Below are positions 32,261 to 34,474 of a DNA stretch of 64,000 nt, piece by piece. Below the pieces are notes generated by a model that worked only from the letters and a program-made list of their open reading frames with translations, made no database searches and was not told the DNA's origin. The first letter of the stretch is position 1. Every line of letters begins with the position of its first letter. The stretch spans positions 44,392,001-44,456,000 of the forward strand of contig NC_043009.1 of NCBI RefSeq assembly GCF_006345805.1, read 5' to 3'. The DNA comes from Octopus sinensis. Taxonomy: Eukaryota. The position numbers and the translations under genes are program-made.

Positions 32261-34474
32261 GGTTAATATAGGGCGTAACAAATATCAGAAAATCAAAAAA
32301 AAAATGTGTGTAATAGGTGTAAAACAACTTCCTATGAACGAATATGAAAAAAAAAATTCGCGCACGCGAAAGGGGGTGGGGGAGAGGCCTCGGAAAATTC
32401 ACATCGGGAAGTTCCGAAAGCGTCTGAGGGGCTGACCCGGGCACCAAAACAAAAAAAAAAAAATAGTGTAATATGTGTAAAACAACTTGCTCTAAACGAA
32501 TATGAAAAAAAAAATGCGCTCTCGAGAAAGAGGGGTGGGGGAGAGGCCTCGGAATATTTATATCGGGAATTTCCGAAAGCGTCTGAACCGGGCACAAAAA
32601 CAAAAACAAAAACAGCGTAATAGGTGTAAAACAACTTGCTCTAAACGACTATCATGAAAAAAATGCGCGCTCGCGAAAGGGGGTGGGGGAGAGGCTTCGG
32701 AAATTTCACATCTTCAGTCCACGGCCTTTAAACTAAGAAAAAATAGTGTAATTGGTGTAAAACTACTTGTTCTAAACGAGTATCAAGAACACACACTCAC
32801 ACATGAATCATAAACTCCGTATTTCGCAAAAAAAAAAAAATAAAGAGAAGAAATTCTGGAAAAAGTGAAGAAATGTTGGATCTCCGCCATGTGAATCAAA
32901 ATACGTGTCAGAAACATCTTGAAATACTACAGAAATTATGTTACGAAAATGATAATGTATACATACCTCTTTGAGTGGTCCATCGATAATGATGATAAAG
33001 AAATGAGTTGGATTTGAACTCAGAATATTGACTAACACAACTACATACTACAAGACTCAAAATATTCAGCCAAGTCACCACCCTTTAACTAGCAATAATA
33101 ATAACATCAATAACATAACAGCCAAAAGATTTATTTGTTCTGAAAATAACAATCATAGTAAATAAATATGTTCTTTAATATTCACATTCATGTGCACGTC
33201 ACGCATGCATAATACAGAACGGAACACATAAATGAAGGATGCATTACTTAGTATATATTACATCTAGAGAATTTTGATTAATAAGTCAAATATGCAAATT
33301 ATAAAGATAATTAATTGCTTTACTAAACAGTGTTGTAAAGGTGAAAAAATAAATTTGGGAAAAAAATACACGCCAAAACTAATTAATAAAGGATAATTAG
33401 GGAAGGATTGACACAAAATAATAATTTTTTCTGTCTCTTTTTTTCTGATAAATGCATCTTAATAAGTGAGAAGAATTGCATATATCTGAACTATTTCAAA
33501 GAAAAGCATAAATTTAATGTTTAAAATAGCTTTAACCAAGGAATGAGATCCAACATTTCTTCACTTTTTCCAGAATTTCTTCTCTTTATTATTTTTTTTT
33601 GCGAAATACGGAGTTTATGATTCATGTGTGAGTGTGTGTTCTTGATACTCGTTTAGAACAAGTAGTTTTACACCAATTACACTATTTTTTCTTAGTTTAA
33701 AGGCCGTGGACTGAAGATGTGAAATTTCCGAAGCCTCTCCCCCACCCCCCTTTCGCGAGCGCGCATTTTTTTCATGATAGTCGTTTAGAGCAAGTTGTTT
33801 TACACCTATTACGCTGTTTTTGTTTTTGTTTTTGTGCCCGGTTCAGACGCTTTCGGAAATTCCCGATATAAATATTCCGAGGCCTCTCTCCCACCCCTCT
33901 TTCGCGAGAGCGCATTTTTTTTTTGTCATATTCGTTTAGAGCAAGTTGTTTTACACATATTACACTATTTTTTTTTTGTTTTGGTGCCCGGGTCAGCTCC
34001 TCAGACGCTTTCGGAACTTCCCGATGTGAATTTTCCGAGGCCTCTCCCCCACCCCCCTTTCGCGAGCGCGCATTTTTTTCATGATAGTCGTTTAGAGCAA
34101 GTTGTTTTACACCTATTACGCTGTTTTTGTTTTTGTTTTTGTGCCCGGTTCAGACGCTTTCGGAAATTCCCGATATAAATATTCCGAGGCCTCTCTCCCA
34201 CCCCTCTTTCGCGAGAGCGCATTTTTTTTTTGTCATATTCGTTTAGAGCAAGTTGTTTTACACATATTACACTATTTTTTTTTTGTTTTGGTGCCCGGGT
34301 CAGCTCCTCAGACGCTTTCGGAACTTCCCGATGTGAATTTTCCGAGGCCTCTCCCCCACCCCCCTTTCGCGTGCGCGAATTTTTTTTTCATATTCGTTCA
34401 TAGGAAGTTGTTTTACACCTATTACACACATTTTTTTTTTGATTTTCTGATATTTGTTACGCCCTATATTAACC
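32261..34474. mobile_element. Non-autonomous foldback DNA transposon with long modular TIRs (Merlin- or MULE-like)
   Basis: Left arm 32261-32884 is the reverse complement of right arm 33545-34474, which has one extra 307-bp dimer. Ends GGTTAATATAGGG..CCCTATATTAACC; direct repeat GATTAATT at 32253-32260 and 34475-34482; 660-bp AT-rich spacer. Confidence 0.9.

What the first reader, a model, noticed from the sequence alone, without database searches (positions are those of the whole stretch)
32261..34474. 2.2-kb foldback transposon with asymmetric modular TIRs, GG..CC ends and an 8-bp TSD
Seen: the 624-bp left arm and 930-bp right arm are near-identical inverted copies built from alternating A/B modules of about 155 bp; the right arm has one extra 307-bp AB dimer. 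The termini are GGTTAATATAGGG/CCCTATATTAACC, flanked by the direct repeat GATTAATT. The 660-bp spacer is non-coding. The arms retain many CpGs, suggesting youth. Known: GG termini with 8-9-bp TSDs fit the Merlin (IS1016-related) superfamily; MULE-derived foldbacks are the alternative. Inference: a recently mobilised non-autonomous foldback family whose TIR modules expand and contract. The TSD is partly palindromic, so the boundary could shift by a few bases.
Basis: partly seen in the sequence, partly recalled or inferred. Interest (0 to 1): 0.75.

Follow-up and report, generated by a model that had tools for sequence, protein, structure and literature searches.

The report
Merlin-type foldback transposon in an octopus genome
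This is a real 2.2-kb non-coding "foldback" jumping gene in what looks like an octopus genome, most likely moved by a Merlin-type transposase; it is a tidy example of a known kind of element, not a new kind of biology.

Summary
Window 32261-34474 is a 2,214-bp element. Its two inverted arms are 624 and 930 bp, identical at 618 of 622 aligned bases. They are built from ~150-bp tandem modules around a 660-bp non-coding middle. The ends are GGTTAATATAGGG.../...CCCTATATTAACC, flanked by a perfect 8-bp direct repeat, GATTAATT. The longer arm carries one exact 307-bp tandem duplication.

No second copy lies in the window. A protein-space search with a spurious ORF of the arm found relatives in other public data. 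One is a 1.66-kb contig (L011). It starts with the same GGTTAAT end, has three homologous modules, and then runs into the C-terminal third of a Merlin (DDE_Tnp_IS1595) transposase. The others are three contigs carrying six modules beside an octopus-type SINE.

A separate Merlin family in Octopus sinensis and O. vulgaris also has GG ends, ~350-bp TIRs and 8-bp TSDs.

I therefore read the element as a non-autonomous Merlin-derived foldback element, structurally like Drosophila Tetris/FB. Merlin is favoured over MULE.

Copy number, empty sites and an intact partner could not be tested. The CpG-based argument for youth is weak.

The parts
32253..32260 (.). Left target-site duplication, GATTAATT
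   Evidence: Exact 8-bp direct repeat of 34475-34482. It is not part of the element in relative L011, whose flank is CGCTAAAA.
32261..32288 (+). Left outer terminal domain (28 bp), GGTTAATATAGGGCGTAACAAATATCAG
   Evidence: Occurs only at the two element ends. Homology to L011 begins at its first base; GGTTAAT is shared and 14 of the first 19 bases are identical.
32289..32712 (+). Left-arm tandem module array: outer A (~158 bp), B (~149 bp) and a truncated inner A'
   Evidence: TRF period 149, 2.8 copies. Module alignment with L011 and L012.
32713..32884 (+). Left-arm inner domain: one degenerate partial module plus unique sequence
   Evidence: Pairs with 33545-33715 at 98.8%. Only its first ~77 bp resemble modules.
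32885..33544 (.). Middle (loop) domain: 660 bp, 27.7% GC, non-coding
   Evidence: No ORF over 76 aa. No tblastn hit to 120 Merlin proteins. No similarity elsewhere in the window or in fetched loci. CpG observed/expected 0.63.
33545..33715 (-). Right-arm inner domain
   Evidence: Inverted copy of 32713-32884.
33716..34446 (-). Right-arm tandem module array, five modules (A-B-A/A' hybrid-B-A' read from the outside). It includes one extra 307-bp unit (33716-34022 duplicated at 34023-34329).
   Evidence: TRF period 307 with 2.4 copies and period 158 with 4.7 copies. The two 307-bp units differ at only 2 positions, both at the A/A' junction. Module 3 is the 5' half of A' joined to the 3' half of A.
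34447..34474 (-). Right outer terminal domain, ending ...CCCTATATTAACC
   Evidence: Exact reverse complement of 32261-32288.
34475..34482 (.). Right target-site duplication, GATTAATT

Best explanation
A non-autonomous, foldback-type cut-and-paste DNA transposon of the Merlin (IS1016/IS1595-related) superfamily, sitting in a probable octopod genome.

Shown:
- It is bounded by GG...CC termini and a perfect 8-bp target-site duplication.
- 70% of its length is two inverted arms. Each arm is a 28-bp outer domain, 3 or 5 tandem ~150-bp modules, and a ~170-bp inner domain. The middle is 660 bp and non-coding.
- A relative with the same terminus and homologous modules carries a Merlin transposase remnant.

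Inferred:
- A Merlin DDE transposase supplied in trans by an autonomous copy elsewhere binds the terminal sequence. It probably also binds the repeated conserved motifs in the modules (GTAATAGGTGTAAAA, AACGAATATG, CGCTCGCGAAAGGGG, GAGAGNCCTCGGAAA).
- The transposase excises the element and reinserts it through an 8-bp staggered cut, which repair turns into the GATTAATT duplication.
- Module number changes by unequal exchange or replication slippage between modules. Here that gave or removed an exact 307-bp unit in one arm.
- The near-identity of the arms reflects a recent insertion, intra-element homogenisation, or both.
For: Real insertion:
- Perfect 8-bp TSD with a chance of about 2.6e-5.
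- Unique, unrelated flanks on the two sides.
- The terminal 28-mer occurs only at the ends.

Foldback anatomy. It matches the outer-domain / tandem-repeat / inner-domain / middle-domain scheme described for Tetris and FB (PMC4079207).

Merlin link:
- phmmer with the arm ORF 33775-34149(-) against 1.84 billion representatives returned P0142. Pfam scores P0142 as DDE_Tnp_IS1595 at 40.5 bits, above the 27-bit cut-off, E 3.6e-10.
- Its contig L011 aligns to the element from element base 1 at L011 position 290, at 64-69% identity over ~290-500 nt, E 1e-33 to 1e-47. The GGTTAAT terminus is shared.
- L011 781-1086 aligns without gaps to residues 210-311 of a 330-aa Merlin transposase, 45% identity, E 2e-25. 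The stretch includes the SDxWxAY and HTxxIERLW motifs and has one in-frame stop.

Superfamily hallmarks met here: 5'-GG termini and an 8-bp TSD (PMC8101967).

Host context:
- Octopus bimaculoides has 191 Merlin sequences.
- O. vulgaris has recently active Merlin families (PMC13282606).
- The Merlin copies in L001 (O. sinensis) and L003 (same assembly) share an ~8.7-kb homologous block and have ~350-bp TIRs starting GGC and 8-bp TSDs (GCAAATCT and CAAGGCTT).
Against: - No intact autonomous partner with these termini was found.
- L011 is a short (1,662 bp) metagenome contig of unknown host and only 64-69% identical. Its right arm is represented by ~25-30 nt at the contig end. 'Transposase remnant lies between the arms' is therefore only weakly shown. 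What is solid is that the inner side of the module array abuts the transposase remnant.
- The arms (624 and 930 bp) exceed the 24-462 bp TIR range quoted for Merlin.
- No second copy exists in the 64-kb window.
- The only octopus Merlin family whose ends I could read has unrelated terminal sequence beyond GG.
- An 8-bp TSD is also compatible with hAT, some MULE/Phantom elements, P and others.
Confidence: 0.68

Rival explanations
1. A foldback element of the Mutator/Phantom (MULE) lineage, like Drosophila FB, Tetris or Meloidogyne Tm1, mobilised by a MULE transposase.
For: Most described foldback elements have been assigned to Mutator. Tetris has 8-9-bp TSDs and ~220-bp TIR tandem repeats with no partner found (PMC4079207). 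Tm1 has 8-10-bp TSDs, mostly 9, and a Phantom transposase (PMC3169594). G-starting termini are common in MULEs (my own knowledge).
Against: The only transposase sequence found physically joined to homologous modules is Merlin-type, not MULE. The TSD is exactly 8 bp, not the 9 bp that is modal for FB and Tm1.
Confidence: 0.12
2. A non-autonomous element of another superfamily that makes 8-bp duplications (hAT, P, Zisupton, Novosib), with L011 being a secondary chimera.
For: TSD length alone does not discriminate. L011 is a single short contig.
Against: hAT termini usually start YA(R)NG and favour nTnnnnAn targets (my own knowledge). Here the termini start GG and the target GATTAATT fits that pattern on neither strand (direct reading). 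P/Galileo elements make 7-bp TSDs. The inner edge of the L011 module array abuts Merlin coding sequence with no intervening terminus.
Confidence: 0.06
3. The TSD is TTAA (piggyBac- or Kolobok-like), the element starts at TATAGGGCG, and GG/CC plus GATTAATT are flanking DNA.
For: TTAA occupies bases 3-6 of each end.
Against: This reading needs an 8-bp direct repeat placed symmetrically in the flanks by chance, about 2.6e-5. The GG preceding TTAA is also present in the independent relative L011, where the further flank differs. The termini would not start with the CCC/GGG typical of piggyBac (my own knowledge).
Confidence: 0.02
4. An assembly or chimeric-read artefact, or a non-transpositional inverted duplication.
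For: Long palindromes and tandem arrays are prone to mis-assembly. All small arm differences but one are homopolymer-length differences typical of long-read error. The exact 307-bp extra unit could be an array mis-count.
Against: The structure lies between two different unique flanks with a TSD, rather than folding the contig back on itself. Homologous modules and the same terminus exist in four independent public contigs. A 660-bp unique middle separates the arms.
Confidence: 0.04

Closest known systems
Merlin superfamily (Feschotte 2004; survey in PMC8101967), including the octopus Merlin copies read here (L001 and L003 in O. sinensis, L002 in O. vulgaris)
   Same: 5'-GG termini and 8-bp TSD. 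Long TIRs (up to 462 bp reported; ~350 bp in L001/L003). Some Merlin copies carry ~160-bp tandem repeats (Symbiodinium). A relative of this element carries a DDE_Tnp_IS1595 remnant. Merlin is abundant and recently active in Octopus.
   Different: This copy encodes nothing. Its arms (624 and 930 bp) are longer than the reported Merlin TIR range and are almost wholly modular. Its terminal sequence beyond GG is unrelated to the L001/L003 family (GGCGATGTTTCG).
Tetris / DAIBAM foldback elements of Drosophila virilis (PMC4079207)
   Same: The same architecture: short outer domain, variable number of ~150-220-bp tandem repeats in the TIR, inner domain, and a non-coding middle domain. TSDs are 8-9 bp, the elements are non-autonomous, and copies are rearranged or asymmetric.
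   Different: Different host phylum and no sequence similarity. Tetris was tentatively assigned to Mutator with no transposase found. Here a Merlin link exists.
Drosophila FB and Meloidogyne Tm1 (Mutator/Phantom foldbacks, PMC3169594)
   Same: Composite TIRs of variable length made of tandem repeats. The TIRs of a single element differ in repeat number.
   Different: FB and Tm1 repeats are short (Tm1: 13-15 bp), the TSD is mostly 9 bp, and the transposase is MULE/FLYWCH.
Galileo (P superfamily foldback-like, PMC3573991 and PMC4168063)
   Same: Long, internally repetitive TIRs that vary between copies. This shows the foldback shape arises independently in several superfamilies.
   Different: 7-bp TSD and a P-type (THAP) transposase.

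Membership tests
Merlin superfamily | Target-site duplication of 8 or 9 bp | tested here: met
   GATTAATT on both sides, exactly 8 bp.
Merlin superfamily | Conserved terminal 5'-GG-3' on both TIRs | tested here: met
   GGTTAAT... and ...ATTAACC. Also GG in L011 and in octopus Merlin L001/L003.
Merlin superfamily | For a non-autonomous element: TIR homology to an element encoding a DDE_Tnp_IS1595 (IS1016-like) transposase | tested here: met
   L011 shares the terminus and modules (E 1e-44 to 1e-47) and carries a Merlin transposase remnant (Pfam 40.5 bits; tblastn E 2e-25). Caveats: it is a remnant with an in-frame stop, on a 1.66-kb contig of unknown host, and only 64-69% identical.
Merlin superfamily | Transposase gene between the TIRs (autonomous member) | tested here: not met
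   The 660-bp middle has no ORF over 76 aa and no tblastn hit to 120 Merlin proteins. The copy is non-autonomous.
Merlin superfamily | TIR length within the described 24-462 bp | tested here: not met
   The arms are 624 and 930 bp. This extends the known range and does not exclude membership.
Foldback-type elements (structural class) | Very long TIRs making up most of the element, with outer domain, internal tandem repeats and inner domain, around a short non-coding middle domain | tested here: met
   Arms are 70% of the length. 28-bp outer domain, 149/158-bp modules, ~170-bp inner domain, 660-bp middle.
Mutator/Phantom foldbacks (FB, Tm1) | MULE/FLYWCH transposase in autonomous relatives; modal 9-bp TSD | tested here: not met
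   The TSD is 8 bp. The one transposase remnant linked to homologous modules is Merlin. No MULE relative was searched for genome-wide, so this is not an exhaustive test.
hAT | 8-bp TSD with nTnnnnAn preference; termini YARNG | tested here: not met
   The TSD length fits, but the termini start GG and GATTAATT/AATTAATC does not fit nTnnnnAn (the consensus is from my own knowledge).
piggyBac / Kolobok | TTAA target duplication | tested here: not met
   A TTAA reading is possible only if the flanking 8-bp direct repeat is coincidence, about 2.6e-5. GG before TTAA is conserved in L011.

The most novel reading that the evidence does not exclude
The ~150-bp CpG-rich modules may be a functional cassette: a multi-copy transposase-binding or regulatory unit. 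They carry motifs conserved between relatives that are 30-35% diverged (GTAATAGGTGTAAAA, TCGCGAAAGGGG, GAGAGNCCTCGGAAA). On this reading a cephalopod Merlin lineage has amplified the cassette into foldback arms well beyond the known Merlin TIR range, and the cassette seeds satellite-like arrays (at least 6 modules beside a SINE in L012) and hairpin-prone fragile sites. That would make this the first Merlin-derived foldback family, parallel to the MULE- and P-derived ones.
Probability: 0.3. Interest if true: 0.5.

Novelty: new member of a known kind. Interest (0 to 1): 0.35.

Why it matters
Foldback elements are hard to classify because they rarely keep a transposase. Most have been assigned to Mutator by default, and Galileo to P.

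Here a spurious-ORF search found a deletion derivative that ties an octopus foldback family to Merlin. That adds a third superfamily in which the foldback shape has arisen, and it extends the TIR length known for Merlin.

Long near-perfect inverted repeats with expandable modules are also sources of inversions, hairpin-induced breaks and new satellites. A young family in the repeat-rich, rearranged octopus genomes is therefore a reasonable marker and candidate driver of structural change.

This is still an ordinary class II transposon. Nothing about its mechanism is unexpected.

Tried and rejected
- Other copies in the window: none for the terminal 28-mer (up to 3 mismatches) or for any part of the element.
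- Exact terminal 26-mer and 19-mer in metagenome contigs and genome contigs: none.
- A degenerate module motif in metagenome contigs gave one bacterial chance hit, L015; viral contigs gave none.
- The 127-aa arm ORF (34102-34482 +) against 5.8 billion proteins: no homologs. The other-strand ORF, searched without a word index, is what succeeded.
- Rfam and tRNA scans of the window: nothing. I suspected a SINE or tRNA fragment in the middle domain, but no similarity to any repeat held here was found.
- Orthologous empty site through the neighbouring hAT gene's O. sinensis homolog (L010): only the hAT copy matches (83%) and the flanks are not collinear.
- Empty-site paralogs of the joined flanks: none.
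- Autonomous partner among known Merlins: 17 loci were fetched. L001-L004 (O. sinensis and O. vulgaris) and L006 (O. bimaculoides) have unrelated termini or no clear TIRs. L005, L007-L009, L016 and L017 are from other organisms. The best match to the L011 transposase remnant is only 45% over the 102-aa remnant (up to 61% over its last ~58 aa).
- Run and sample accessions of L011-L014 were not found in the paper library, so their hosts are inferred only. L012 carries an octopus-type SINE fragment at 77-82% identity.
- Rejected readings: TTAA TSD; each arm as a separate element (the arms have no internal termini); assembly palindrome.

Full report
**1. What is in the sequence**

The window is eukaryotic. 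It has 37% GC, CpG observed/expected of 0.56, abundant (GT)n/(AT)n runs, and SINE-like repeats. Its repeats match Octopus sinensis loci at 88-90% identity. A hAT/FAM200-like ORF at 39473-39907(-) has O. sinensis LOC115216280 as its best named hit, at 77%. The host is therefore most probably an octopod.

The element occupies 32261-34474 (2,214 bp).
- The left arm, 32261-32884, was aligned with the reverse complement of the right arm, 33545-34474. The alignment gives 618 identities and 4 substitutions.
- It also gives five 1-2-nt indels, four of them in A or G runs.
- One block of about 304-307 bp is present only in the right arm.
- The arms are separated by 660 bp (I19).

TRF reports periods of 149/158 bp and a 307-bp dimer.

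Read from the outside, each arm has three parts:
- a 28-bp outer domain;
- tandem modules, A-B-A' on the left and A-B-A*-B-A' on the right;
- a ~170-bp inner domain.

Module A* is a hybrid. Its 5' part is identical to the innermost A' and its 3' part to the outermost A. The two 307-bp units differ at only two positions, both at that junction. This is the footprint of one recent unequal exchange or slippage event within "GAAAGGGGGGTGGGGGAGAGGC". It could be a duplication in the right arm or the reciprocal deletion in the left arm; the polarity cannot be told.

**2. Ends and target site**

The terminal 28-mer GGTTAATATAGGGCGTAACAAATATCAG occurs only at the two ends, in inverted orientation. None is expected in shuffled sequence.

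It is flanked by GATTAATT on both sides, exactly 8 bp. At the window's base composition, an 8-bp match has a probability of about 2.6e-5.

Because ATTAAT is palindromic, the inverted repeat formally runs 10 bp further out, with mismatches (I5).

The flanks themselves are unique and unrelated to each other. The left flank is the end of a compound microsatellite.

An alternative TTAA-target reading (GG|TTAA|TATAGGG) would require the 8-bp repeat to be coincidence. It is further weakened by the conserved GG in an independent relative.

**3. Coding capacity**

- Nothing in the middle domain exceeds 76 aa.
- tblastn with 120 Merlin proteins finds nothing in the middle domain.
- The window has no Rfam match and no tRNA.
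- The long ORFs in the arms (127-129 aa) are repeat translations with no Pfam match.

**4. Relatives elsewhere**

There is no other copy in the window. Exact-match scans of the prokaryote-centred DNA collections were empty. One arm ORF had no protein homologs.

The opposite-strand arm ORF (33775-34149, -) was searched with phmmer against 1.84 billion representatives. It gave two meaningful hits: P0141 (Logan contigs L012-L014) and P0142 (ENA metagenome contig L011).

*L012.* This contig holds six ~150-165-bp modules that are 64-72% identical to ours. They lie next to a fragment of the octopus-type SINE that is 77-82% identical to the window's copies.

*L011.* This contig is the informative one.
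- After 289 bp of unrelated flank it begins GGTTAAT.
- 14 of the first 19 bases are identical to ours, and the BLAST alignment starts at element base 1.
- Three modules follow (start-to-start spacing 178 and 159 bp).
- At position ~781 the array runs straight into sequence that aligns without gaps to residues 210-311 of a 330-aa Merlin transposase. Identity is 45% and E is 2e-25.
- That stretch includes the SDxWxAY and HTxxIERLW motifs and has one in-frame stop.
- Pfam scores P0142 as DDE_Tnp_IS1595 at 40.5 bits, above the 27-bit cut-off.
- The last ~25-30 nt of the contig read as an inverted module core (CGCGAAGGGGGTGGGGGCGAGAG). This is consistent with the start of a right arm, but it is thin evidence.

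The simplest reading is that L011 is an internally deleted Merlin element whose TIRs belong to the same module family as ours.

A multiple alignment of 15 modules from the three sources shows motifs conserved in at least 80% of them:
- AG.GTAATA.GTGTAAAA
- AA.GA.TAT
- T.CGC.CTCGCGAA.GG.GG
- GTGGG.GAGAG.CCTCGGAA..TT

**5. Merlin in octopus**

The literature (PMC8101967) defines Merlin by 5'-GG termini, 8/9-bp TSDs, TIRs of 24-462 bp and a DDE_Tnp_IS1595 transposase. It reports 191 Merlin sequences in O. bimaculoides. A 2026 repeat annotation of O. vulgaris lists recently active Merlin families (PMC13282606).

I took one O. bimaculoides Merlin protein from that paper's supplement and used it to retrieve Merlin loci. 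In O. sinensis, two copies with identical transposase (L001 and L003) share 8.7 kb; the O. vulgaris copy (L002) matches over most of that block. L001 and L003 have ~350-bp TIRs beginning GGCGATG.../GGCATAG... and perfect 8-bp TSDs, GCAAATCT and CAAGGCTT.

So long-TIR, GG-ended, 8-bp-TSD Merlins are active in this host lineage. That particular family is not the partner of our element, since there is no similarity beyond GG.

**6. Interpretation**

The element is a non-autonomous foldback-type transposon. I assign it to Merlin with moderate confidence (about 0.7).
- Shown: the structure, the TSD, the terminus, homology to a Merlin-bearing relative, and a module-number change by a clean 307-bp event.
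- Inferred: trans-mobilisation by an as yet unseen autonomous copy, binding of the transposase to the repeated module motifs, and recency.

On recency: the perfect TSD and 0.6% arm divergence fit a young insertion, but arms of one element can homogenise each other. The high CpG content of the arms (observed/expected 1.3 against 0.54) is not good evidence of youth, because the CpGs lie in motifs conserved across relatives that are 30-35% diverged. Constraint or lack of methylation would explain them equally well.

**7. Comparison with known elements and novelty**

In architecture the element is closest to Tetris/FB-type foldbacks. By its ends, its TSD and the linked transposase it belongs with Merlin.

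Foldback shapes are already known to have arisen in Mutator/Phantom and P. A search of the paper library found only three papers containing all three search terms (Merlin, foldback, transposon), and neither of the two listed is, by title or abstract, about such elements. I cannot exclude that curated repeat libraries already hold this family.

I therefore rate it a new member of a known kind, of modest interest.

**8. Limits**

The tools hold no searchable eukaryotic genome DNA. Copy number, TSD diversity, empty sites, an intact partner and read-level support for the arm asymmetry remain untested.

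Noticed in passing
window 56566-62301: A 346-bp satellite: 16.4 tandem copies, 90% matches. It has strong GC and AT skew (about +0.47 and +0.2) and a high CpG observed/expected (about 1.5-1.8), unlike the rest of the window.
   Followed up: partly
window 31600-32215: Compound (GT)n/(AT)n microsatellite with a higher-order ~71-83-bp period. It ends about 45 bp to the left of the element's insertion site.
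   Followed up: no
window 38396-39939 (-): Remnant of a hAT/FAM200-ZBED5-like transposase. It is 83% nt-identical to a copy in O. sinensis chromosome CM016868.1 (L010), and its best protein hit is LOC115216280 at 77%. The flanks are not collinear, so it is a paralogous copy.
   Followed up: partly
window, e.g. 16329-16724, 17970-18376, 47066-47480, 54402-54769, 62774-63152: Many copies of a ~400-bp SINE-like repeat, 86-90% identical to copies in O. sinensis and O. vulgaris loci (L004, L002). This is the main evidence for the host lineage.
   Followed up: partly
window 563-1461 (+): ORF fragments that look like the C-terminal part of a retrotransposon protein. One has a PHD-finger hit (PF00628, E 1e-5).
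   Followed up: no
window 35682-35969 (+): Short ORF with C2H2 zinc-finger-like hits (E 1e-5 to 5e-7), embedded in microsatellite-rich DNA. It could be an exon or a TE fragment.
   Followed up: no
L001 265-8996 and L003 252-8997 (O. sinensis): An ~8.7-kb Merlin-bearing element. It has ~350-bp TIRs containing a microsatellite, a second internal inverted-repeat pair (638-981 / 5412-5755, 99%), GGC termini and perfect 8-bp TSDs. The copies are 99.4-99.6% identical between loci, and the O. vulgaris copy (L002) is 98.1-99.4% identical to L001 over most of the block, so the family is apparently young.
   Followed up: partly
L005 5936-9196: An ENA contig, not octopus, with Merlin DDE fragments repeated in tandem every 1,473 bp.
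   Followed up: no
module motif, e.g. window 32569-32578 (GGGAATTTCC): B modules contain GGGAATTTCC, which fits the kappaB-site consensus GGGRNWYYCC. All modules contain the palindrome TCGCGA. There is no evidence of function.
   Followed up: no
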